A stretch of DNA of 63,908 nucleotides, filler included, from Octopus bimaculoides (lineage: Eukaryota), in NCBI RefSeq assembly GCF_001194135.2. It is 5 parts of 4 records of this genome, joined end to end, with 100 filler letters (N's around TTAATTAATTAA, not from the genome) between each part and the next. Parts side by side here need not be neighbours in the genome. Positions count along the whole stretch, not along the records: positions 1 to 20,456 come from NC_068990.1; 4 more parts are not named here. One strand, 5' to 3'. The translations under genes and the position numbers were made by a program. The notes under the pieces are model-generated. The model ran no database searches. It was not told where the DNA came from and saw nothing but the letters and a program-made list of their open reading frames with translations. Positions 1 to 20,644 of the stretch are shown in pieces; positions within the stretch are counted from its first letter, which is position 1, and the number at the start of each line of letters is the position of its first letter.

Positions 1-483
1 TATGTATGCATGTATGTATGTATGCATGTATGTATGCATGTATGTATATATGTATGTATGCATGTATGCATGTATGTATGTGACATTTTGGTGGGTGTAT
101 GCACATGAATGATGACATTATGACTGGTCACTTTTCACTTTCAAAGACTAGTAGAATAAGATATCTCTTATTTGAAAACAAGGTAAAGGTTGACAGAAGG
201 AAAGGCATTTGGCTGTAAATTACTGCCTCAGATAAGTTCCTGTCCACCCTAAAAACAGCCTTAGAATGAAGTGATGAATGAATATTGTACTATAACAGAC
301 AGCATTTCAAACCAATGAAGATGTTACAGAATGGAAGGTGAGAGACATTAATATATCCAAGGTCAGCAGTCAGCTTTTTCATAGCTCGTTACCAGATCAT
401 TTCCTGATAACCTTGGTATTTTAATGAATCATGGTGTACATTAGTAACAAACAAAGCCTGCTTAAATCATCAATCTTATAGAT

Positions 484-2601: not shown

Positions 2602-2982
2602 ATCTTTTATCTTTTGCTTGTTCCAGTCATTAGACTGTGGCCATGCTGGAACACTACCTTCAAGAATTTAAGTCAAATGAATTGCCCCCAGTACTTATTT
2701 TGTTTTAAGCAGTCTCTTTTGCCAAACCACTAAGTTACGGGAGACACAAATATACCATTACCAGTTGTCAGGAAGTGGTGGAGGCAAACACCAGCACAAT
2801 GACACACACACACATATACAACCGGCTTCTTTCAGTTTCCATCTATCAAATCCAATCACAAGGCTTTGGTTGACCAGAGGGTATAGTAGAAGACACTTGC
2901 CCAAGGTGCCATGCTGTGGGACTGAACCCAAAACCATGTGGATGGGAAGCAAACTTCTTGCCACACGGCCATATCTGTGCCT
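2602..2982 (-). mobile_element. SINE family A, full-length copy (tRNA-like head)
   Basis: Homologous by eye to copies at 51899-52283, 52391-52780 and 62235-62620. The minus strand has a B-box-like GGTTCAGTCCC head, an internal (TG)n tract and a conserved tail. Confidence 0.8.
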
Positions 2983-5618: not shown

Positions 5619-5688
<70 letters not shown>

Positions 5689-6010: not shown

Positions 6011-6090
<80 letters not shown>

Positions 6091-6635
6091 TACCTTCTTT
6101 TAGTTTCTGTGTGTGTACATGATATATAGTATTTTATAGAAGCTGAGAAACTTCACAGACTGTTACTCATATTTCACTTAATTATTATATAGAATTGAAC
6201 TTTTGGAACAATACAATGGTTTATATACAATTTTAAATAATGAAATGGTTATTCTTTGGCAAATAATCAAATAAACATTTAAAGCTGATTAGACAAAGGG
6301 TTATAACATTTCAGAATTAATTGAATCTGTTAGATAATATGACTGACTATTTATGTAAAGCAATATAAATATCAAATAGAAATAAAATACAGTTGAATAA
6401 AACTAATCACAAGCCATTGGCACAGGGTAATAGTTATAATATTTACAGCCAAAGAAAAATTGCAGGCGAGAATCATTTTAGTATTAGTGCATTGGAAAAA
6501 TGCTTTCCATCATATATTCTGGCTATTTATGTCCTGAGTTCAATTCCAACTTCGTCTTTCATTCTTTCATGGTTGATAAAATAAAGTACTAGTCAGATAC
6601 TGGGGTTGATTTAATCAACTAACTCCTTCCCAGAA

Positions 6636-6929
6636 TTCTTTATTTCCAATATCTTTGGTTTGTTGCATGAATTGACCATGTAATTCTTCCTCTTTTCAGG
6701 TATTTATCCTTTCATTATTCCTTCTGTTCTTGAATTCTCCTACAGTTTCAGTAAATATTTTGATATTTCTAGCTGCCAATAATGTACTTTCTTAAGCTTG
6801 CTTCCTAAACACATGGTTCTGGGTTCAGTTCCACTGTGGGGCAGATTAGGCAAGTGCCTTCTGCTATAGCCTCAGGCCGACCAAAGCCTTGTGAGTGGAT
6901 ATGGTAAGTTGTATTCTTTTTATTCTTTT
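6636..6929 (+). repeat. Direct duplication of 7884-8197 (Dong-like fragment fused to SINE A head)
   Basis: ttctttatttccaatatctttgg...gagtggatatggtaagt is near-identical at 6636-6909 and 7884-8157, including the same LINE/SINE junction. Confidence 0.85.
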
Positions 6930-7174: not shown

Positions 7175-8030
7175 AACATGCTGCATTAGTTAGCAGGTTT
7201 GGTGAAAACAGATCCCTTCAAATCTCAAGAATCTTTCAAAGAATTCTTGCAGAAGACAGAATTGCACTTTTCTACTGGTCAATAATGCAAGTCTCAATTC
7301 CAATATCCTTCAGCCTCTTACGTAGCATTTAGGGTGCTATGCCAAGTGCACCAATTACCACAGGAAGAATTGTCATCTTAATATCTTAATCTTCCATAAT
7401 CTCTCCACCTCTCTAACTAGGTATCCACTCAATTATCATATGGTATTGTGAAGTCTATAATCTGTCACTGTTCTTTTTCTTTTTTCTTCACTCCTCTACA
7501 ATCATATACAGACCTCTTGCTTCAATATTATAATCAGAGATAATGGAGAAATTACAGAAAATTCTGTAATTATTATTTTCCATCCGGCTCAAGTTCATAC
7601 CACATTTTGCTACTTTGAATCCATACAATCAAGCTAACAGTTCAATGCACTCTTTTACCTACTTAGTCATGTCTGCACTGATACTCTTTTTGTGCCAGTT
7701 TATTGCATCACCTAAGAGATGGCTAATGCTTTTGTCTCTTTTTCCCACAAATTCTGCATTTGTTCTCTGAGTTTTATCCCTCTTTGTCTTTATCAAATTC
7801 ATTCTAATGGCTTGTTCCAAAGTGGTTATAATTATTGATTTGGTTTCTCGCTTCAGATTTCAATCTATTAGCCACAACCAGAGTTCTTTATTTCCAATAT
7901 CTTTGGTTTGTTGCATGAATTGACCATGTAATTCTTCCTCTTTTCAGGTATTTATCCTTTCGTTATTCCTTCTGTTCTTGAATTCTCTTACAGTTTCAGT
8001 AAATATTTTGATATTTCTAGTGGCCACTAA
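7175..8030 (-). mobile_element. R4/Dong-like non-LTR retrotransposon, degraded 3' part (REL endonuclease region)
   Basis: Broken minus-strand frames give QIIDFTIPYDN, ILPVVIGALGIAP and LRKRLKDIGIE, matching the better-preserved ORF at 33296-33844. Short (AAT) tail at about 7150-7170. Confidence 0.7.
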
Positions 8031-8301
8031 TATACTTTCTTAAGCTTGCTTCCCAAACACATGGTTCTGGGTTCAGTTCTACTGTGTGGCAGATTAGGCA
8101 AGTGCCTTCTACTATAGCCGCAGGCCGACCAAAGATTTTTGAGTGGATATGGTAAGTGGATACTGAAAGAAGCCCGTCGTATTCTTTTTATTCTTTTATT
8201 CTTTTATTTGTTTCAGTCGTTTGATTGTGGCCATGCTGGAGCACCACCTTCAAATGTATGTATGTGTATGTATATATGTATATATATGTATATATATATA
8301 C

Positions 8302-8538
8302 ATCCCTACAAGTCAATCAGGTCCATCACCAGGGACATGAGAGTGTCTAAGTTTCTTATCAGGTAGGTAGTGCATGAAGACATTCAGTATTCTTCATAGA
8401 AGATGAGAAAGGGCCNNNNNNNNNNATGAAGACATTCAGTATTCTTCATAGAAGATGAGAAAGGGCCAATTTTTATCCCAAGCCATCAAAGACAAGAGAA
8501 AAGACTGCACTACGAAGCTTTTGAACAAACTCAAGCAT
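8302..8538 (+). repeat. Duplicated internal fragment of the adjacent maT transposase (8965-9149)
   Basis: 185 bp near-identical to 8965-9149 once the 42-bp overlap around the 10-N gap (8416-8425) is removed. Flanked by (TA)n on both sides. Confidence 0.8.
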
Positions 8539-8714
8539 GTATATATATGTATATATATATATATATATACATACATATGCATATACAAGGTGCAATGTGT
8601 AAATTGTTGCTATATTATAGTTTTAATCTTATGCATGCACATTGTTTGTTTTTGATTTTGTTGACTACACAGTATAGTAGGGTCAGTTGGACACCGACTG
8701 AAAAAAACAGCACC

Positions 8715-9577
8715 ATGTCACAATTCAATCTGCCAGAAATTTGGAAGCGACATGCTATACTGCTTGGCATTTGCACCAGAAGCTCCAATACAAACATTTC
8801 AGAGTGTTTGGGTGTCAGTCTGAGGATAGTGCAGAGGATCTGGAAAGAGTTGGATGAGTCTAATGGTGATTACGAAGGTACAGCAGCTTGGAAAACTGAC
8901 TCTGATTGTTCTGATCAGAAAAGAACTGAATTTGTTGATGAGATCCAGGCTATGATTGACAACGATCCCTACAAGTCAATCAGGTCCATCACCAGGGACA
9001 TGAGAGTGTCTAAGTTTCTTATCAGGTAGGTAGTGCATGAAGACATTCAGTATTCTTCATACACGATGAGAAAGGGCCAACTTTTATCCCAAGCCATCAA
9101 AGACAAGAGAAAAGACTGCACTACGAAGCTTTTGAACAAACTCAAGCATCACCTGTAACTAAACATGCTTTGGTTTTTCTCAGATGAAATTTCTGCCAGG
9201 ATCAGATGGTGAACATACAGAACAACCATTGGTTTACTGTGTCCCCAAAACATGTACCAAGAGGGATAAAAATCAAACATCTAGTCAACATCATGGGGTT
9301 TGGAGTGATTACTAATAATGGTGACATTATGCCTCCATTCATCTTCCCACGCGGCCTTAGACTCAACACAGAGGCCTACATCAAGTGCTTGAAGGAGATA
9401 GTGCAGCTCTGAGTCAAGAGGGTGGCTGCTGGAAGACCCTATGTCTGGCAACAGGACTCTGCACCATGTCACACAAGCAGGAGAACTCAGTCATGGCTGT
9501 CAGACAATTTCTGCAACCACATCACCCCTAACATCTTGCCACCTAACTCCCCAGGCTGCAACCCCCTTGATTATTAT
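8715..9577 (+). pseudogene. Tc1/mariner superfamily, maT (DD37D) transposase pseudogene
   Basis: Joined frames: MSQFNLPEIWKRHAILLG (HTH region)...WFFSDE...VWQQDSAPCHTSRRTQSWL...PPNSPGCNPLDYY. There are 37 residues between the 2nd and 3rd Asp. Stops and a frameshift are present and the 3' end is truncated. Confidence 0.9.
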
Positions 9578-9811
9578 GATGATGATAATGTGAATATCTT
9601 TTGTTCATTATCATTTTTGCATTGACAAGAAAACTAAAAGACAGGTGATTTTTCAAACAACGACTTTTGCAATATTTGTTCTCGACCGAGTTACTGACAG
9701 TTCCTTGTAACTCATGCCAACAGAAATTTCATGAACCAGTGGATGGCCCATTCAAGGCCTGCAACCAACACTAATATTGCTTACAAATTGTAACATAAAA
9801 TTATGAAGGTC

Positions 9812-11104: not shown

Positions 11105-11399
11105 CTTTCCGTATTCCCGAGCGTCATACTAATATATACTTTTGTTATTTACACCACCTGTCCTCGTCTGTTGTTATTATTTGTATATTCTCCCATATAT
11201 ATATATATATATANNNNNNNNNNNNNNNNNNNNNNNNNNNNNNNNNNNNNNNNNNNNNNNNNNNNNNNNNNNNNNNNNNNNNNNNNNNATATATATGTAT
11301 TATATATATATATATTTGCATAGTAAAAGATTATTTGTTTCACACATGATATTGAGACTATATAGATTTTATCACATTTCTAGGTAATTTGACATCAGG

Positions 11400-12065: not shown

Positions 12066-12395
12066 GAATGAAAGTGAACTTCAGAAGTTATAACTTTACC
12101 CTACGTACAACTGATGTCTCATACAGAAATGTATCTTGGTTCTGGGACACCTTACCACCAAGTAAGAGCACATTAAAATACACAGAGACCAAGCACCTAC
12201 ATAAGAGAGGGTTTCTTTTCCGAAGACCTTCTGTTGTTCAGCTCTCTCAAGATTTTCTTACTATCTATCTATCTATATATATAGATCACATCTTGTGTCT
12301 ATTAAGACCTAAAATGTTCACAACATGAAATATAGCAGCATACCAAAAACGCGAGGGTGGGCAAGACATTTAAAATCACCTAAAAAAGCATTATT

Positions 12396-12460
12396 AAACA
12401 GGAACTAGTTTCGGATTTAACAAATTCTTACCATTTGTCTATTCCTCATCAGCCTGATTT
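12396..12460 (-). ncRNA. Putative minimal type-I hammerhead ribozyme, canonical core
   Basis: Minus strand reads AAAUCAGG-CUGAUGA-GGAAUAGACAAAU(GGUAAGA)AUUUGUUAAAUCC-GAAA-CUAG-UU-CCUGUUU. Stem I is CAGG/CCUG with further pairs, stem II is 13 bp with 2 mismatches, palindrome ACUAGU, triplet GUU. Confidence 0.75.
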
Positions 12461-13295
12461 GTAATTTAACCGTAATCATCAGAATCGTATACAGAGTTGC
12501 CCACCGCCATGGGTGTGCGTGCATATGGTTCTGCTAATTACAGCTTAATGGTAAAATTCAAAAGTCTTCGTTTTGGCGCGCTAATTCCAGGAATATATCC
12601 GCAGAAAATATTTACTGCATCATATATTCAGTATGAGAACATGGGCAATGGGTAAAATATTATTATAAAATCTGGTAATTAGTCATATATTAATTAATAT
12701 CGATTAATTATCAGGAGGCCAGCACATGTAAAGGTACATTTTTAAAAAATAACGTCGACCACTNNNNNNNNNNNNNNNNNNNNNNNNNNNNNNNNNNNNN
12801 NNNNNNNNNNNNNNNNNNNNNNNNNNNNNNNNNNNNNNNNNNNNNNNNNNNNNNNNNNNNNNNNNNNNNNNNNNNNNNNNNNNNNNNNNNNNNNNNNNNN
12901 NNNNNNNNNNNNNNNNNNNNNNNNNNNNNNNNNNNNNNNNNNNNNNNNNNNNNNNNNNNNNNNNNNNNNNNNNNNNNNNNNNNNNNNNNNNNNNNNNNNN
13001 NNNNNNNNNNNNNNNNNNNNNNNNNNNNNNNNNNNNNNNNNNNNNNNNNNNNNNNNNNNNNNNNNNNNNNNNNNNNNNNNNNNNNNNNNNNNNNNNNNNN
13101 NNNNNNNNNNNNNNNNNNNNNNNNNNNNNNNNNNNNNNNNNNNNNNNNNNNNNNNNNNNNNNNNNNNNNNNNNNNNNNNNNNNNNNNNNNNNNNNNNNNN
13201 NNNNNNNNNNNNNNNNNNNNNNNCCAAGGTGCCACACAGTGGTATTGAATCCAGAAGCATGTGGTTGGTGACCAAGCTACTTACCACACAACCAC

Positions 13296-13326
<31 letters not shown>

Positions 13327-13708
13327 GCAATAAGAAAATGGAGGGGATTAATAGGTGGTATTCATCAACTTGCAGACATTGTATTATGTCAATTTACTTG
13401 TTTATTTGTTTGCTAAAAGGACAATAATAACAATATACAAACACATGTGACATATTATGTCATATCAGTAATTATAAAAATGACATATAGTGACAGAAAT
13501 CCAGCAGTATATTGGAGCGTAGGCTCAAAACGTAAAAGACTTTCTCACTTCCCAACCATTAAACTAACATATCTGTTTGTTTTTTAAACACTCGTCTTCG
13601 TCTTTTGTTTTGTATGTTTTTTTTTTTGTAAATTCCAATTATATCTATACATATAAATTTAACATGGGCGATTCTTTCTTGTATATTTTCTTGAATATAT
13701 ATTTATAC

Positions 13709-13751
13709 TCCAGACTGATGACGAGCAAAGACCCAGAAACATGTCTCTGGA
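13709..13751 (+). ncRNA. Putative minimal type-I hammerhead ribozyme
   Basis: UCCAGA-CUGAUGA-CGAGCAAAGACCCA-GAAA-CAUG-UC-UCUGGA. Perfect 6-bp stem I, palindrome ACAUGU, triplet GUC. Stem II is weakened by mismatches. Confidence 0.65.
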
Positions 13752-13918
13752 TGCAGACTTAGCTAAGTGGAGGTGATTGTCTCCCGCTTGTAAACATAAG
13801 GACACAGGAAATGTGTCAAGGCTGGCAGGAAGCGGTGCTGCTTCCTATAGCTAAATAGCAGTAGTATTATTCCCTTCATGGGACTGTCACATTAAGTTGA
13901 CAGCATACAACTACTATA
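13709..13918 (+). mobile_element. Hammerhead-bearing short repeat, partial copy (same family as 18711-19175)
   Basis: Colinear with 19027-19178 followed by the reverse complement of 18763-18821. Confidence 0.8.
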
Positions 13919-14194
13919 TATATAAAACATATATTCTATCTTTTACTTGTTTCAGTCATTAGACTGCAGCCATGCTTGTGCAACACACACATATATATAT
14001 AGACAGACAGATATATATATGTATGTATGTATGTATGTGAGTATGTATGTATGTATGTATGTATGTATGTATGTATTTATGCATACATTTATGTATGTAA
14101 GTGTGTATATGTACATACAAGCACATAACTGCAAAACAAAGCAGAGAAAATAGCACCTGAATAGCAAAGGTAGAGTTATACAAGGAGTTTTGCT

Positions 14195-14610
14195 GAAAGT
14201 GAAAAACTTTTCAGTTCAAATTCTGACGAGGTCGACTTTGCTTTTCATCCTTTTGGGGTCAATAAATTAAGTACCTGTTGCATACTAGGATCGATTTAAT
14301 CGACTGTCCTTCTCCCCCAAAATTTTGGGCCATGTGCCTAGAGTAGAATATTTATATGCTTATAAATTTTTAATATTTATTAATATTTATTTGCTTATTA
14401 AGTGAGCCAACACAACCATTAGTATGATGGATAAAATGCTTAGTGGCATTTTGTCCATCTTTGTGTTCTGAGTTCAAATTCCACCGAGGTCAACTTTGCC
14501 TTTCATCCTTACAGTGTCCATGAAATAAGCACCAGTTGTGCACTGGTGTCGATGTAATTGACTGCCTCCCCTCCCACCAAAATTCAAGCCTTTGCCTATA
14601 ATAAAAGAGA
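14195..14610 (+). mobile_element. Two tandem SINE family C copies
   Basis: gagttcaaattcc.ccgaggtc.actttgcctttcatcc motif occurs at about 14215 and 14470. Other copies lie at about 17470, 22195(-), 28710(-), 39780 and 61750(-). Confidence 0.75.
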
Positions 14611-15950: not shown

Positions 15951-17728
15951 CAATTTTTTTTTGTGTAATGCCATTGGCAAAACTGAAGTGTTTAAGGGGA
16001 CAGAGTGAAGCCAATTAAATATAGCATTTCATATCATTGACCCAAGAAGGATAAAATGTAATGGTGACCTCTTCAGATTTGAACTCAGTCAATAAATAGA
16101 TGTTACTAACTGCTACAGGGTTTTAGATGGTGTAGGTCATCGTTGAGCCTCTCAGAAGGCTGTGATCTCGTTATAGTAAACCTGGATGAAGAACATATAC
16201 AAGCAAGGTTGTAACTTTAAACACGTTTATTGTGGCCACACATATATACACAATGGAATGATAAATAGAATGGTTGGTGTGTAAAGGTTATGGTCTTCTG
16301 TGCTATGCTCCTATCTGCAAGCTGGCCTGTGGCATAAGATAGAGCCAGTCAAGTTGCGTCCTCATAGCTTGCATATCCATACAGAAAATGAGTAAGAGAT
16401 GAGGTCACGTGTATGGACCTTAATGTCAAGCAACGCCCTCTATATCTGTATAGCCAGCTTGTTTACCCACTGTCAAGGGCGAGTAATGTGCCTACAAGGT
16501 ATTTTGTTTAGCATTTTACTAATTCTACCAAATCTTTAAGCTGGTGATAAGTTAGCAGAATTATCAGTGTTAGACAAAATGACTTACAGTGTGTATTCTA
16601 ACTCTTTACATTTTGTGTTCAAAACCCACTAAGATCAAATTTATTTATCATCCTTCCTGGGTCAATAAAATAATGTCCCTGTCCAGGGTAGTGGAACAGC
16701 AGAATTGTTAGCATATTAGCCAAAATGGCATACAGTATTTTTTCCAGCTTTCCACATTCTGGGTTTATTTGTGATGACATTAGTGACAAGCTGTACCAGG
16801 CTTTGATTTCCCTCGGACAACAGCAGTAGCCTGGAACTAGGAGGCTTGCTGCATTGGCAAAGACTAGTCTTCCGTTATCAAAAAATAAAAACAATTCCAT
16901 GTCTGCAACCTGAACAGGAACTTCCTAGGTGCAGATGGTTAACACTGACAATTAGTCAAAGCATGGCACATGCTACCAGGTCATACACACTTGTAAGTAG
17001 TAGCTATGGGTGTTTTTTTTTTTTTTCACTAAGCCAACATTAACTGCAATATTATAGACTAATTTGTTTGACGTGAAAATCAGATGCAGCATGTGTAATA
17101 TATATTTATCATGTCAACATTAACTGATGCAGCACTGTGCACCCTATATGTGATGTATCAGAATTAGCTGCAACATTGCATAATCTATATTTGATGTGTT
17201 ATCATTATCAGCAATATCAGAAAACCTATATTTGATCTGTCAGCATGAATCATTGTTTTTTGCAAAATACATTTTGATGTTTTAACTATATTTTGTAGTA
17301 AATATTCAGTTGCACCTGTATGTCCATGCATCAACTATGGCCGAAACCATTTTATATTCACACATGTACAACATATTTTAGTATTTCAAGAAGGGCTGCA
17401 AAATGTTTCATCACAGATTTTATGCATCAATATCAAGTGCAGTTTTAGGGCAACAATCTGACTGAATCGTTACCATGCAGGGCAAAATGCTTAGTGGCAT
17501 TTCGTCCATTCTTACATTTCAAATTCAAATACTGCCACAGTCGACTTTACCTTTCATCCTTTTGGGGTCGATAAAATAAGTACCAGTTGAGCACCGAGAT
17601 TGAAATAAACAACTTAGCCCCTTCCCTGAAATCTTTGTGCCAAAACTTGAAACCAATATCATGTGCAGTTTAGGTGACATGCTTAATCCTTAGCATGTCA
17701 GATAAAATGCTTAGTCATTATAGTAGGT

Positions 17729-18280: not shown

Positions 18281-18710
18281 AAGTGTGAATGAGTAAATCA
18301 AAGAGTTTCAACAAGCTCAAGAGATGGATCAGGCAAACAAATGAATGACCATTGATGAGATGGCATGTTTTCTTCAAATTAGTCATGGTTCTGCTTATAA
18401 ATCATCCATGATAACGTTTGCTTATGTAAAGTCTGGATGAGATGGGTGCTAAGAGTGCTTACGAAAATGCATAAGCACAACTGAGTGGAGATCTGTCAAT
18501 GATTATTCAACTACTGCAACAATGAAGGTAAAGCTTTACTGAAGAGAATAGTCACAGGAGATGAGACCTGGGTCCATGACTTTGAGCCAAGACTCTAAAG
18601 GCAGAATATAAAGTCAAAACACTTGTAATCACCAGTAGAAAAGAAATTCAAGACTCTACCATCTGCAGAAAAGGTGATACTAACTGTTTTATGGGAGGCA
18701 ATACTTGAAT

Positions 18711-19175
18711 TAGAAATAATACATTTCTAAATCTCTCAGAGAGACTTAAGCAGTAGTGATGCAATAAAGTAGTTGTATACTGCCAACTTAACGTGGCAGT
18801 CCCAATAAGGGAATATATTACTGCTATTTAGCCCTAGGAAGCTGGACCGCTTCCTGTCGACCTTGACACATTTCCTGTGTCCTTATCGCATCACTACTGC
18901 TTAAGTCTCTCTGAGAGATTTAGAAATGTATTATTTCTAATTTTTGTAATCAGTGAATGTGTTTCACTGAAATAATATATGTTTGCGAGAGTTGGACAGA
19001 CTTCTTCAACCAGCTGGTCATGCTACTTCAGGCTGATGACGAGCAAAGACTCAGAAACATGTCCATGAATGCAGGCTAGGCTGGGTGGAGGAGTTTGTTT
19101 CCCCTTCGCAAACATAAGGACACAGGAAATGCATCAAGGCCGACAGGAAGCGGTCCAGCTTCTTAGGGCTAAATA
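18711..19175 (+). mobile_element. Hammerhead-bearing retro-insertion (retrozyme-like or Penelope pLTR-like) with inverted 5' segment
   Basis: 13-bp TSD GCAATACTTGAAT at 18698-18710 and 19176-19188. Perfect 52-bp inverted repeat 18711-18762/18888-18939 and 65-bp inverted repeat 18822-18886/19114-19178 (4 mismatches). Hammerhead at 19027-19069. Confidence 0.85.
19027..19069 (+). ncRNA. Putative minimal type-I hammerhead ribozyme
   Basis: UUCAGG-CUGAUGA-C-GAG(CAAAGA)CUC-A-GAAA-CAUG-UC-CAUGAA. Stem I has 5/6 pairs, stem II 3 bp, palindrome ACAUGU, triplet GUC. Confidence 0.7.
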
Positions 19176-19697
19176 GCAATACTTGAATGTTATCTGGAAA
19201 AGGGATCTACAATCACCAGTGAAGGCTATAGTGAAATGCTAGCCAAGAAACTGAAACCATCAATTCACACCAAACGCTAGGGTCTGTTGTCAAAGCAATA
19301 TTGTTGTATGACAACACACACCCACATACTGCCATGACAACACACACCCATGTTCTGTCACCCACATCATTGAAACTATTGATATACATATATATATCGC
19401 TACATAAGTATGTATATGTATGTAGGATGAGCATGTGTGTGTTTCTTCTTGTCCTGTTGTGAGCACATTAATTGTAAACAAAAGCCACCGTCTTATAAAA
19501 ACAGTGTCACTTATTAGCAATCTTCAGTGAAAACTTGTGTGATAAAGGTGTCATTTATTATTCACACACTAGAAGAAATATTAGCTTACTTGGAACCAGG
19601 TGAAGAGGATTGATAAAAGGAAGAAAATTTGGCCATGGAATAATCTACTTCGACACAGTTTTGTCTGATCAATACAAATGCGAAAAAGTAGACATGA

Positions 19698-19744
19698 TTG
19701 TGATGATGATGATGATGATGATGATGAGGAGGAGGAGGAGGAGG

Positions 19745-19792
<48 letters not shown>

Positions 19793-19925
19793 ATGATGAT
19801 GATGGGGCCGGCGGCGGTGGTGGCGATGATGACAATGACAATGATGATGATGATGACAATGACAACGGTGATGATGATTATGATGACGATGACAAGAATG
19901 ATGATTATGATGATGATAGTGATGA
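19698..19925. repeat. Compound trinucleotide microsatellite (GAT/GAG/GAC/GGC)n
   Basis: Directly visible. It produces the poly-D, poly-H and poly-M pseudo-ORFs in the ORF track. Confidence 0.95.
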
Positions 19926-19964
19926 TATCTATCTACCAATTTATCTGTGTGTGTGTGTGTGTGC

Positions 19965-20004
<40 letters not shown>

Positions 20005-20644
20005 ATATTGATAAATAAATGTTACTTGAAGTCATATGCAACCAATTTTACAATAAAGCACATTATTAAAATTCATTGTTGCATTAGTGAAAAGGCTGAA
20101 CACAGCCAAAACAATGGCTGTTTTACTTTGCTCATTTTTACCCCCCCTTCTATTTTGATATGCCATTTGCATTGAAATATATTTGAATGTTTATTGTGCT
20201 AGGGGCCAGTAATATTTCGAGGTCATTAGGGGCCTGAGCCCTTAAACTCTATTGTAATATCATTAACTAAAATCAATATGTGAGTTTGCAGGAAAACATG
20301 CTGTAAATTCAGTGTACTAGAAGAGGTGAACTCTGATGTGTGCATGTGTGTATGTATGCCTCTGTGAGTGTGTGATGTGTGTGTGTGTGTGTGTGTGTGT
20401 GCATGTGTGTATGTATGCATCTGTGAGTGTGTGATGTGTGTGTGTGTGTGTGTGTGNNNNNNNNNNNNNNNNNNNNNNNNNNNNNNNNNNNNNNNNNNNN
20501 TTAATTAATTAANNNNNNNNNNNNNNNNNNNNNNNNNNNNNNNNNNNNNNNNNNNNAGACAGACAGACAGACAAAGAGAGAAAGTGATGATAGATAATAG
20601 TTAGGTACGGATGTAGGTAGGTGCATAGGTAATACGGACCGACA

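What the first reader, a model, noticed from the sequence alone, without database searches (positions are those of the whole stretch)
18698..19188. Retrozyme-like ~350-nt hammerhead element with evidence of a tandem or circular template, inserted into a mariner fossil
Seen: a 465-bp insert splits a mariner transposase and is flanked by a 13-bp TSD (GCAATACTTGAAT). Its forward part (18888-19178) reads A-X-hammerhead-Y-B. Its inverted part (reverse complement of 18711-18886) reads B-M-A, so the sequence after B continues through 59 nt (M) and returns to A. The template was therefore a head-to-tail repeat or circle of about 291+59 = 350 nt with one type-I hammerhead per unit. The independent copy at 13709-13918 confirms the B-M junction. 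The inversion junction has TAT microhomology (18884-18886). Established: non-LTR retrozymes (roughly 150-450-nt tandem units with type-I hammerheads that give circular RNAs) are known from some metazoans, and Penelope-like elements carry minimal hammerheads in pLTRs and often insert with an inverted truncated pLTR. Inference: this is a non-autonomous, PLE-mobilised, self-cleaving element family in a cephalopod. I cannot tell whether it has been described.
Basis: partly seen in the sequence, partly recalled or inferred. Interest (0 to 1): 0.9.

Follow-up and report, generated by a model that had tools for sequence, protein, structure and literature searches.

The report
Hammerhead retrozyme copy inside mariner fossil
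A 465-bp piece of a small, non-coding retroelement that carries a hammerhead ribozyme (a 'retrozyme', a kind already known from mussels, corals and salamanders) sits inside a dead mariner transposon, and the arrangement of its two halves shows it was copied from a template longer than one 350-nt unit; it is a clear example of a known class, not a new class.

Summary
A 465-bp insert (18711-19175/8) flanked by an exact 13-bp duplication splits a mariner transposase. Homologous transposases align up to residue 156 on the left and from residue 160 on the right. The insert is an inverted part (B-M-A) joined to a forward part (A-X-hammerhead-Y-B). Together with a second, independent copy (13706-13918, hammerhead-Y-B-M), the three pieces close a 350-nt circle, so the template was longer than one unit or circular.

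Rfam finds no hammerhead. However, a covariance model built only from four experimentally characterised animal retrozyme ribozymes ranks the two window motifs first and second in the 20 kb (E=1.4e-5 and 0.004). Helix I shows two compensatory changes between the copies. The reconstructed circle folds far better than shuffles (z=-5.6).

The inverted-plus-forward layout, variable ends, microhomologies and AT-rich targets fit mobilisation by Penelope-like-element machinery, but no reverse transcriptase is in the window.

Not testable here: tandem arrays, family consensus, self-cleavage, circular RNA, host species. Both copies have a C·A mismatch at the base of helix II.

Verdict: a new member of a known kind (non-LTR retrozyme). 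Interest is moderate.

The parts
18698..18710 (.). Left copy of the target-site duplication GCAATACTTGAAT. Its last 3 nt (AAT) are also the end of the inverted element copy (microhomology).
   Evidence: D1, 100%
18711..18886 (-). Inverted partial copy, read on the minus strand as B (18886-18822), M (18821-18763), A (18762-18711). It contains no hammerhead.
   Evidence: unit dimer positions 227-405, 97.8% over 179 nt
18883..18886 (.). Inversion junction. The 4-nt overlap TTAT is shared by the end of the inverted part and the start of the forward part.
   Evidence: arms I1 and I2 overlap at 18883-18886
18887..19178 (+). Forward partial copy: A (18888-18942), X, hammerhead, Y, B (19114-19178). 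It ends 115 nt after the ribozyme cut site.
19027..19069 (+). Type-I hammerhead motif UUCAGG-CUGAUGA-CGAG-CAAAGA-CUCA-GAAAC-AU-GUC|CAUGAA. The predicted cut is 19063|19064. Helix III is the palindrome ACAUGU (dimer type). There is a C·A mismatch at 10.1/11.1.
   Evidence: 17.4 bits, E=0.0037, rank 2 of the window; descriptor, 0.009 expected by chance
18978..19116 (+). Long imperfect hairpin that extends helix I and carries the hammerhead at its tip.
   Evidence: I3: 37-nt arms, 73% complementary; -59.3 kcal/mol, z=-5.65
19176..19188 (.). Right copy of the target-site duplication. Its first 3 nt (GCA) are also the last 3 nt of segment B (microhomology).
   Evidence: (the other copies continue GCAGTA...)
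13706..13918 (+). Independent, older, 5'-truncated copy: hammerhead (13709-13751, cut 13745|13746), Y, B (13796-13860), M. It starts at the 5' strand of helix I, ends 173 nt after the cut site, and lies in AT-rich/(TA)n sequence.
   Evidence: 83% to unit positions 137-349; 25.7 bits, E=1.4e-5, rank 1
18300..18700 (+). Mariner transposase fossil, part upstream of the insertion (frameshifts and stops present).
   Evidence: P0001 residues 23-156
19179..19348 (+). Mariner transposase fossil, part downstream of the insertion.
   Evidence: P0001 residues 160-212

Best explanation
The insert is one integration event of a small (~350 nt), non-coding, highly structured retroelement. Each unit carries one type-I hammerhead ribozyme, so it is a non-LTR 'retrozyme'-type element.

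Shown:
- The unit order is A-X-HHR-Y-B-M-(A), closed on itself.
- The insert consists of an inverted B-M-A piece abutting a forward A-X-HHR-Y-B piece.
- The insert is flanked by a 13-bp target duplication inside a mariner ORF.
- A second insertion of the same family, 5' truncated, lies 5 kb away.

Inferred mechanism:
- A staggered double nick (7-13 bp stagger) was made in the target.
- Both 3'-OH ends primed reverse transcription on element RNA. Each annealed by 3 nt of microhomology at an internal site: GCA at unit position ~294 for the bottom strand, AAT at unit position ~55 for the top strand.
- The bottom-strand cDNA ran back 300 nt across the uncleaved hammerhead to the M/A border. The top-strand cDNA ran back 179 nt through A, M and B.
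- The two cDNA ends annealed through TTAT/ATAA and were sealed.

The two cDNAs together cover 410 nt of a 350-nt cycle, and one of them crosses the ribozyme cut site. The template was therefore a multimeric transcript of a tandem array or a circular RNA, not a self-cleaved linear monomer.

Priming from both strands, internal initiation, variable 3' ends, an inverted truncated copy at the 5' side and AT-rich targets are properties of Penelope-like-element RT/GIY-YIG machinery. That machinery is the most likely mobiliser.

The ribozyme's helix III is only the palindrome ACAUGU. It is therefore expected to cleave as a dimer in multimeric transcripts, releasing unit-length RNA that can be circularised.
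For: Repeat anatomy and TSD.

Clean empty site in the mariner ORF.

Hammerhead identity:
- Model R1 was built only from coral, mussel and two axolotl retrozyme ribozymes (sequences from supplementary Table 2 of PMC7229834). It ranks 13709-13751 (25.7 bits, E=1.4e-5) and 19027-19069 (17.4 bits, E=0.0037) first and second in 20.4 kb on both strands.
- A relaxed descriptor is expected 0.009 times per shuffled window.
- GAAACAUGUC is identical to the axolotl Ax330 ribozyme.
- Helices I (6 bp), II (4 bp) and III (1-2 bp, palindromic) have the sizes given for canonical metazoan type-I hammerheads (PMC4209133).
- Helix I has two compensatory double changes between the copies (G-C to A-U, U-A to C-G). 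P is about 0.003 at the mean 17% divergence.
- The M hairpin has one more compensatory change, C-G to U-A.

Structure: the circular unit folds at -113.3 kcal/mol against -83.8±5.3 for shuffles, z=-5.6.

Non-coding: there is no stop-free stretch over 59 aa in the unit and no protein relatives. GC is 41.7%.

PLE signatures from the literature:
- Both strands are cleaved and extended, RT initiates internally, and there are two alternative start sites (the 'tail') (PMC11167929).
- An inverted 5'-truncated copy lies at the 5' side, TSDs vary in length, and there is a (TA)n target bias (PMC8557442).

Here the 3' ends lie 115 and 173 nt after the cut site, and the second copy sits in (TA)n-like sequence.
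Against: - Rfam's hammerhead families give no match, even at E<=10 on 121-141-nt slices.
- Both copies have C·A instead of the highly conserved G10.1-C11.1 pair. The second copy also has an A·C mismatch in helix II. The copies in hand may therefore be catalytically dead. CpG decay of an ancestral CUCG is plausible (window CpG o/e 0.25) but not shown.
- No tandem array of the unit is in the window. No other copy could be retrieved from any collection. The 350-nt cycle therefore rests on three pieces from two loci.
- No RT or GIY-YIG remnant was found in the window.
- Three different cDNA start points (unit positions ~55, ~294, ~345) are more than the two adjacent sites reported for the anole PLE.
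- With the local divergence of helix I (42%) instead of the mean, the covariation P rises to about 0.10.
Confidence: 0.65

Rival explanations
1. The pieces are heavily 5'-truncated insertions of an autonomous Penelope-like element. What looks like a 350-nt unit is the pseudo-LTR region of that element (possibly internally repeated), not a separate non-autonomous family.
For: Hammerheads sit in PLE pseudo-LTRs. PLE insertions are typically 5' truncated, partly tandem, and carry an inverted truncated copy at the 5' side. Retrozymes and pLTRs are sequence-related in Xenopus. The distance from cut site to 3' end (115 nt) is on the scale reported for the anole PLE (85-92 nt).
Against: B-M-A is contiguous in the inverted part and A...B is contiguous in the forward part, so the cycle closes in 350 nt with no room for a 2.5-kb ORF. 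No RT/EN remnant flanks either copy. The ribozyme has the canonical architecture (helix I 6 bp, helix II 4 bp). It lacks the long helix II and short helix I of the PLE minimal hammerheads.
Confidence: 0.15
2. A SINE-like or other LINE-dependent retroposon that happens to contain a hammerhead-like string. The inversion would be ordinary L1-type twin priming.
For: Twin priming by LINE machinery gives the same inverted-plus-forward layout with TSD and junction microhomology (established for L1; my own knowledge). Rfam does not call a hammerhead. The core has a 10.1/11.1 mismatch.
Against: There is no tRNA/5S/7SL-like head and no poly(A) or simple-repeat tail at any of the three 3' ends. The 3' ends are internal and differ between copies. 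An independent model of validated retrozyme ribozymes finds both motifs as the top hits, and helix I covaries. A linear retroposon does not explain the circular permutation.
Confidence: 0.08
3. DNA-level event: fragments of a tandem satellite, or of extrachromosomal circular DNA derived from it, were captured during repair of a break in the mariner, with no reverse transcription.
For: Circular permutation and microhomology at all three junctions are also what end-joining of satellite or eccDNA fragments would give. Retrozyme multimers behave like satellites.
Against: An exact 13-bp target duplication points to staggered nicks and fill-in, not break repair. A second dispersed, 5'-truncated copy lies in AT-rich DNA. 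The two parts overlap in A, as expected for two cDNAs copied from the same template.
Confidence: 0.07

Closest known systems
Metazoan non-LTR retrozymes (Cervera & de la Pena 2020, PMC7229834), e.g. the Mytilus galloprovincialis 350-390-bp repeats, coral 220-240-bp repeats and axolotl 330/350-bp repeats
   Same: Unit size (350 nt). One type-I hammerhead per unit, with a 6-bp helix I, 4-bp helix II and a minimal palindromic helix III. GC below 45%. No ORF, LTR, PBS or PPT. TSD longer than 4 bp. Highly self-paired predicted RNA. The GAAACAUGUC segment is identical to axolotl Ax330.
   Different: No tandem array is seen here; only a 1.17-unit permuted insertion and a truncated monomer. There is no sequence similarity outside the ribozyme core. 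The 10.1/11.1 position is C·A (the axolotl Ax353 ribozyme has U·U there). Expression, cleavage and circles are untested. The inverted-plus-forward layout is not described for retrozymes in the papers read.
Penelope-like elements: pseudo-LTRs with hammerheads and complex tandem/inverted insertions (PMC4209133, PMC8557442, PMC11167929)
   Same: Inverted truncated copy at the 5' side of a forward copy. Variable TSD. 5' truncation. AT-rich/(TA)n targets. 3' ends at alternative internal sites roughly 100-170 nt downstream of the ribozyme. Palindromic helix III that implies dimeric cleavage.
   Different: No RT/GIY-YIG ORF: the unit closes in 350 nt. Helix II is short (PLE minimal hammerheads have 7-8 bp). 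The spacing of the alternative 3' ends (about 51-60 nt) is larger than the 30-40-bp PLE 'tail'.
L1 twin priming (inversion with 5' truncation)
   Same: Both ends of a staggered break prime cDNA synthesis. The result is an inverted 5' segment joined to a forward 3' segment through microhomology, inside one TSD.
   Different: No poly(A). Priming is at internal RNA sites. The inverted segment lies downstream of, not upstream of, the forward segment unless the template is circular or multimeric.
Classical hammerhead satellites/SINEs of animals (newt satellite 2, Schistosoma Sm-alpha)
   Same: Type-I hammerhead with a weak helix III that is active as a dimer. A 6-nt loop 2 beginning CAAA (my own recollection for Sm-alpha, not tested here).
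   Different: No sequence homology was tested or available. Sm-alpha is a tRNA-related SINE, and no such head is present here.
Plant LTR retrozymes (PMC4918200)
   Same: Non-autonomous, hammerhead-bearing, with circular RNA intermediates.
   Different: Plant elements have type-III ribozymes in LTRs, PBS/PPT, 4-bp TSDs, 600-1000 nt and high GC. None of these features is present here.

Membership tests
Non-LTR retrozyme (metazoan) | Type-I hammerhead with the conserved core CUGANGA / GAAAY / RUH and foldable helices I-III | tested here: met
   The core is present in both copies. Model R1, built from four validated retrozyme ribozymes, gives E=1.4e-5 and 0.0037, ranks 1 and 2. The descriptor is expected 0.009 times by chance. 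Caveat: C·A at 10.1/11.1.
Non-LTR retrozyme (metazoan) | Head-to-tail tandem repeats of 150-450 bp (dimers to multimers) in the genome | tested here: inconclusive
   No tandem array is in the window. A template longer than one unit is inferred from the closed cycle A..B / B-M-A / B-M.
Non-LTR retrozyme (metazoan) | Low GC (<45-50%), no ORF, no LTR/PBS/PPT | tested here: met
   GC is 41.7%. The longest stop-free stretch is 59 aa, with no homologues. There are no terminal direct repeats other than the permutation.
Non-LTR retrozyme (metazoan) | TSD, when present, longer than 4 bp | tested here: met
   13 bp exact, or 7-13 bp allowing for the microhomologies.
Non-LTR retrozyme (metazoan) | Highly self-paired unit RNA | tested here: met
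   Circular fold -113.3 kcal/mol, z=-5.6, 62% of bases paired.
Non-LTR retrozyme (metazoan) | Self-cleavage and accumulation of unit-length linear and circular RNA | not testable with these tools
   Needs transcription assays and host RNA.
Penelope-like element (autonomous copy or its pLTR) | Adjacent ORF with telomerase-like RT and GIY-YIG endonuclease | tested here: not met
   The unit closes in 350 nt. There is no Pfam RT/GIY-YIG in stop-free fragments of 55 aa or more in the window.
Penelope-like element (autonomous copy or its pLTR) | Insertion signatures: inverted 5'-truncated copy at the 5' side, variable TSD, alternative internal 3' ends, AT-rich/microsatellite target | tested here: met
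   compared with PMC8557442 and PMC11167929. These features show use of PLE-like machinery, not membership.
Rfam hammerhead families (clan of Hammerhead_1, _3, _II, HH9, HH10) | Match to a curated covariance model | tested here: not met
   No hammerhead match at E<=1 on the window or at E<=10 on short slices.
SINE | Pol III-type head (tRNA, 5S, 7SL) and LINE-type 3' tail | tested here: not met
   ARAGORN finds nothing. Rfam gives no small-RNA match in the element. There is no A-rich or simple-repeat tail.
mariner (host of the insertion) | Transposase_1 DDE domain in one frame across the reconstructed empty site | tested here: met
   Pfam PF01359, E=1.4e-6. Homologues at E=8e-38. tblastn is contiguous across the site.

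The most novel reading that the evidence does not exclude
The insertion preserves the moment of integration of an animal retrozyme. Two cDNAs were primed from both strands of one staggered break, by 3-nt microhomology at internal sites, on a circular (or multimeric) ribozyme RNA, and were then joined by microhomology. If genome-wide copies show the same layout and the same clustered start points, this would be the first junction-level description of how retrozymes are integrated by Penelope-type enzymes. It would also come from a lineage in which they have not been reported in the literature searched.
Probability: 0.35. Interest if true: 0.6.

Novelty: new member of a known kind. Interest (0 to 1): 0.4.

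Why it matters
How animal retrozymes integrate is proposed but not documented at the level of junctions. This insertion has an unambiguous empty site (a readable mariner ORF), an exact TSD and three mapped microhomologies. It therefore gives concrete, testable predictions:
- Both strands prime.
- Initiation is internal, 115-173 nt after the ribozyme.
- The template is uncleaved and longer than one unit.

It also adds a structurally canonical type-I hammerhead family in a CpG-depleted invertebrate-like genome. That family can be used to seed a genome-wide search. The class itself, and its link to Penelope-like elements, is already in the literature, so the gain is incremental.

Tried and rejected
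- Rfam cmscan on the whole piece and on two short slices gave no hammerhead. The microRNA 'hits' are (TATG)n/(TA)n microsatellites.
- An exact 18-mer from the ribozyme was scanned in IMG/VR and JGI metagenomes. It gave 35 loci, all chance matches with no flanking similarity.
- A 24-specified-base pattern from segment B was scanned in bacterial/archaeal genomes and IMG/VR, with no match.
- A 122-aa conceptual translation across X-HHR-Y-B-M-A was searched against 5.8 billion proteins, hoping to reach ORFs called on host contigs. There were no hits.
- An exact look-up of a window ORF found nothing on record.
- Relatives of the neighbouring Tc1-like transposase were used to reach host-like DNA. 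Two ENA contigs (ERZ21867824, L036/L037, 41 kb) share that transposon at 77-80% nt identity but contain no copy of the unit. The host species stays unidentified.
This was replaced by stop-free fragments, which gave no RT/EN.
- The MAFFT alignment of the six ribozymes (A3) misplaced the 3' strands, so it was not used for pair counting.
- Cofolding of the 43-nt motifs shows only that the palindrome pairs; it is not decisive.
- Rejected: two successive insertions (there is no internal TSD).
- Rejected: a simple fold-back or inversion. The inverted repeats cross rather than nest, and A is duplicated.
- Rejected: B as a terminal direct repeat of a linear element. In the second copy B is followed by M.
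- The A arms being identical while the B arms differ at 4 sites was considered as evidence for two different units of a multimer. All four differences are transitions and two lie in one former CpG, so post-insertion decay explains them equally well.
Full report
**Observation**

The region was read directly and scanned for repeats. An exact 13-nt direct repeat, GCAATACTTGAAT, lies at 18698-18710 and 19176-19188.

Between the two copies there are two pairs of inverted repeats that cross each other:
- 18708-18767 pairs with 18883-18942 (segment A).
- 18819-18886 pairs with 19114-19181 (segment B).

A simple fold-back or an inversion cannot produce crossing arms. A circular permutation can.

I then searched it against the piece.
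- As a dimer, the unit matches the inverted part colinearly over 179 nt at 97.8% (unit positions 227-405).
- It matches a second locus, 13706-13919, over unit positions 137-349 at 83%.

The three-way alignment shows that the second copy continues from B into M, just as the inverted part does. The three contiguities A-X-HHR-Y-B, B-M-A and HHR-Y-B-M therefore close a cycle of 350 nt.

**The mariner host**

I removed the insert and one copy of the repeat. This gives a continuous reading frame (...VLWEAILECYLEKG...) that hits Pfam Transposase_1 across the junction (E=1.4e-6).

The fossil finds mariner transposases in the protein database (best E=8e-38, 56-59% identity). In tblastn, five of them align up to 18700 and resume at 19179. 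For P0001 this is residues 53-156 and then 160-199, with the frame change expected for 478 nt. This proves a single insertion with a target-site duplication.

**Is it a hammerhead?**

Rfam says no. No hammerhead family appears at E<=1 on the piece or at E<=10 on slices of 121-141 nt.

By eye the motif is UUCAGG-CUGAUGA-CGAG-CAAAGA-CUCA-GAAAC-AU-GUC|CAUGAA.
- Helix I is open, so it is type I.
- Helix II and helix III are closed by loops.
- Helix III is reduced to the palindrome ACAUGU.

I ran two independent tests.
- A relaxed descriptor (core boxes; helix II of at least 3 bp; helix I of at least 5 of 6 bp) matches once in the piece. It is expected 0.009 times per dinucleotide shuffle (9 of 1000 shuffles). 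The descriptor was written after seeing the motif.
- I took the four retrozyme constructs of Cervera & de la Pena (coral Amil224, mussel Mg353, axolotl Ax353 and Ax330; supplementary Table 2 of PMC7229834). I aligned their ribozymes and built a covariance model with the textbook structure. I searched the 20.4 kb with filters off.

The two best hits of that search are 13709-13751 (25.7 bits, E=1.4e-5) and 19027-19069 (17.4 bits, E=0.0037). The model had seen no window sequence.

The architecture matches what PMC4209133 gives for canonical metazoan type-I hammerheads: helix I 6 bp, helix II 4 bp, helix III 1-2 bp with a palindromic loop. The GAAACAUGUC stretch equals that of axolotl Ax330, whose monomer cleaves poorly.

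Between the two window copies, helix I changes G-C to A-U and U-A to C-G, and repairs a G·A to G-C. Two compensatory doubles in 6 pairs have P of about 0.003 at the mean divergence of 17%. P is about 0.10 if the local divergence of 42% is assumed.

Weak points:
- Both copies have C opposite A at 10.1/11.1, where G-C is highly conserved.
- The older copy has a further A·C in helix II.

The window is strongly CpG-depleted (o/e 0.25), and most differences among the copies are CG to TG/CA. An ancestral CUCG, giving a 4-bp CGAG/CUCG helix II, is therefore plausible but not shown. A U·U mismatch at the same position exists in an axolotl retrozyme ribozyme that still cleaves weakly.

**Other structure**

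- The hammerhead sits at the tip of a long imperfect hairpin, 18978-19116 (-59.3 kcal/mol, z=-5.65).
- The whole unit folded as a circle gives -113.3 kcal/mol against -83.8±5.3 for shuffles (z=-5.6). It consists of a string of hairpins.
- The hairpin in M keeps pairing through a C-G to U-A change between copies.
- The hairpin in B keeps its stem while its loop changes.
- The unit has 41.7% GC, no stop-free stretch over 59 aa, no protein relatives, no tRNA-like or other small-RNA head and no A-rich tail.

**Mechanism**

The geometry fits two cDNAs primed from the two 3' ends of a staggered break.

- The right end of the insert is ...AAATAGCA, followed by the duplication. GCA is shared between element and target, and the other copies continue GCAGTA.
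- The left end is the duplication followed by TAGAAATAA..., with AAT shared.
- The bottom-strand cDNA therefore started at unit position ~294 and ran back 300 nt, through the uncleaved ribozyme, to the last bases of M.
- The top-strand cDNA started at position ~55 and ran back 179 nt through A, M and B.
- Their ends overlap by TTAT (18883-18886).

Together the two cDNAs span 410 nt of a 350-nt cycle. They overlap in A (55/55 identical). No linear monomer, whatever its ends, can hold both, so the template was multimeric or circular.

The B arms differ at 4 of 65 positions. All four are transitions, and two lie in one former CpG. This does not discriminate between two units of a multimer and later decay.

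The second copy is 5' truncated exactly at the 5' strand of helix I. It ends in an AC-rich stretch just after the M hairpin, 173 nt after its cut site, and is embedded in (TA)n-like sequence. The forward copy ends 115 nt after its cut site.

**Who mobilised it**

The papers read give the following properties for Penelope-like elements:
- The purified anole enzyme cleaves and extends both target strands.
- It starts reverse transcription at internal, non-homologous sites about 85-92 nt past the ribozyme cut site, at two alternative positions (the 'tail').
- It prefers AT-rich DNA (PMC11167929).
- Genomic copies are 5' truncated, partly tandem, often have an inverted truncated copy at the 5' side, have variable TSDs, and favour microsatellites (PMC8557442).

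Every one of these signatures has a counterpart here.

The window itself holds no RT or GIY-YIG remnant in stop-free fragments of 55 aa or more. The rest of the genome could not be reached, so mobilisation by a PLE is an inference.

**Comparison and novelty**

- Non-LTR retrozymes are tandem units of 150-450 bp with a type-I hammerhead, low GC and TSDs over 4 bp. They are expressed as circular RNAs. They are described in cnidarians, a mussel (350-390 bp), an axolotl and many invertebrate phyla (PMC7229834).
- A 2026 preprint argues that they derive from PLE pseudo-LTRs.
- The literature library holds no report of hammerhead retrozymes in octopus or other cephalopods. However, I could not establish that the window is cephalopod.
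- The element passes the retrozyme features that can be tested on 20 kb. It leaves open the tandem arrays and the RNA biology.
- It is a new member of a known kind. What is unusual is only the clarity of the integration scar.

**External searches that failed**

- Ribozyme and B-segment patterns were scanned in viral, metagenome and prokaryote collections. They gave chance hits only or none.
- A translated-frame search gave nothing.
- An exact ORF look-up gave nothing.
- Two ENA contigs were reached through the neighbouring Tc1-like transposon. They share that transposon at 77-80% nt identity but contain no copy of the unit.

Noticed in passing
window 12397-12458, minus strand (context 12270-12763): A third, unrelated hammerhead-like motif: AUCAGG-CUGAUGA-GG[29 nt, long imperfect helix II]CC-GAAAC-UA-GUU|CCUGUU. 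It has a canonical G10.1-C11.1 pair and the palindrome ACUAGU. It scores 12.9 bits (E=0.077) with model R1. It shares no homology with the 350-nt unit beyond 15 nt of helix I and core. The surrounding sequence is unusually CpG-rich. It ends about 117 nt after the predicted cut, at a (TA)n(GATA)n microsatellite, and runs 5' into the assembly gap. It may be a PLE pseudo-LTR or a second retrozyme family.
   Followed up: partly
window 8430-9622 (+), with a partial duplicate at 8302-8538: Fossil of a Tc1-like (DDE_3) transposase with a few frameshifts and stops. The best relatives are 70-71% identical proteins from a Logan assembly and from ENA assembly ERZ21867824. The DNA is 77-80% identical to two contigs of that assembly. 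Part of the element is duplicated just upstream, next to a 10-N gap at 8416-8425.
   Followed up: partly
window 12764-13223, 11214-11288, 8416-8425: Runs of N (assembly gaps). The largest, 460 N, lies between the third hammerhead-like motif and the second retrozyme copy. PLE-type tandem/inverted insertions are said to break short-read assemblies.
   Followed up: no
window 2816-2966, 6794-6909, 8042-8182, 13224-13289: A short dispersed repeat family (77-81% identical copies, both orientations). In addition, a 280-nt direct repeat at 94.6% lies at 6630-6909 and 7878-8157. The copies share a conceptual peptide GYSRRHLP..P..GTEP.TM..GSKL. Identity not determined.
   Followed up: no
window 14206-14324, 14433-14584, 17484-17594 (and weakly 16622-16700): Another dispersed repeat family (76-83% identical). 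Its minus-strand translation repeats the motif YFIDP.RMKGKVDLGG. There is no Pfam match.
   Followed up: no
window 1-81, 5619-5684, 6011-6088, 14014-14108, 19701-19926, 20337-20456: Dense microsatellites: (TATG)n, (ATCT)n, (CA)39, (TGA)75, (TG)n. They account for all the sub-threshold microRNA 'matches' in Rfam and for the long His/Asp/Met-rich pseudo-ORFs at 19586-20175.
   Followed up: yes
whole piece 1-20456: GC is 35.9%. CpG observed/expected is 0.25, with TpG+CpA at 1.39. This is strong methylation-type CpG decay, and it shapes the differences among the retrozyme copies.
   Followed up: yes
window 18698-18710 and the empty site: If the shared GCA is assigned to the element, the bottom-strand primer ends ...AAGTATT-3'. 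That means cleavage just after a 5'-ATT-3', the motif preferred by the anole PLE endonuclease. The top-strand end (...GAAT-3') does not fit as neatly. This is a single site with no statistics.
   Followed up: no
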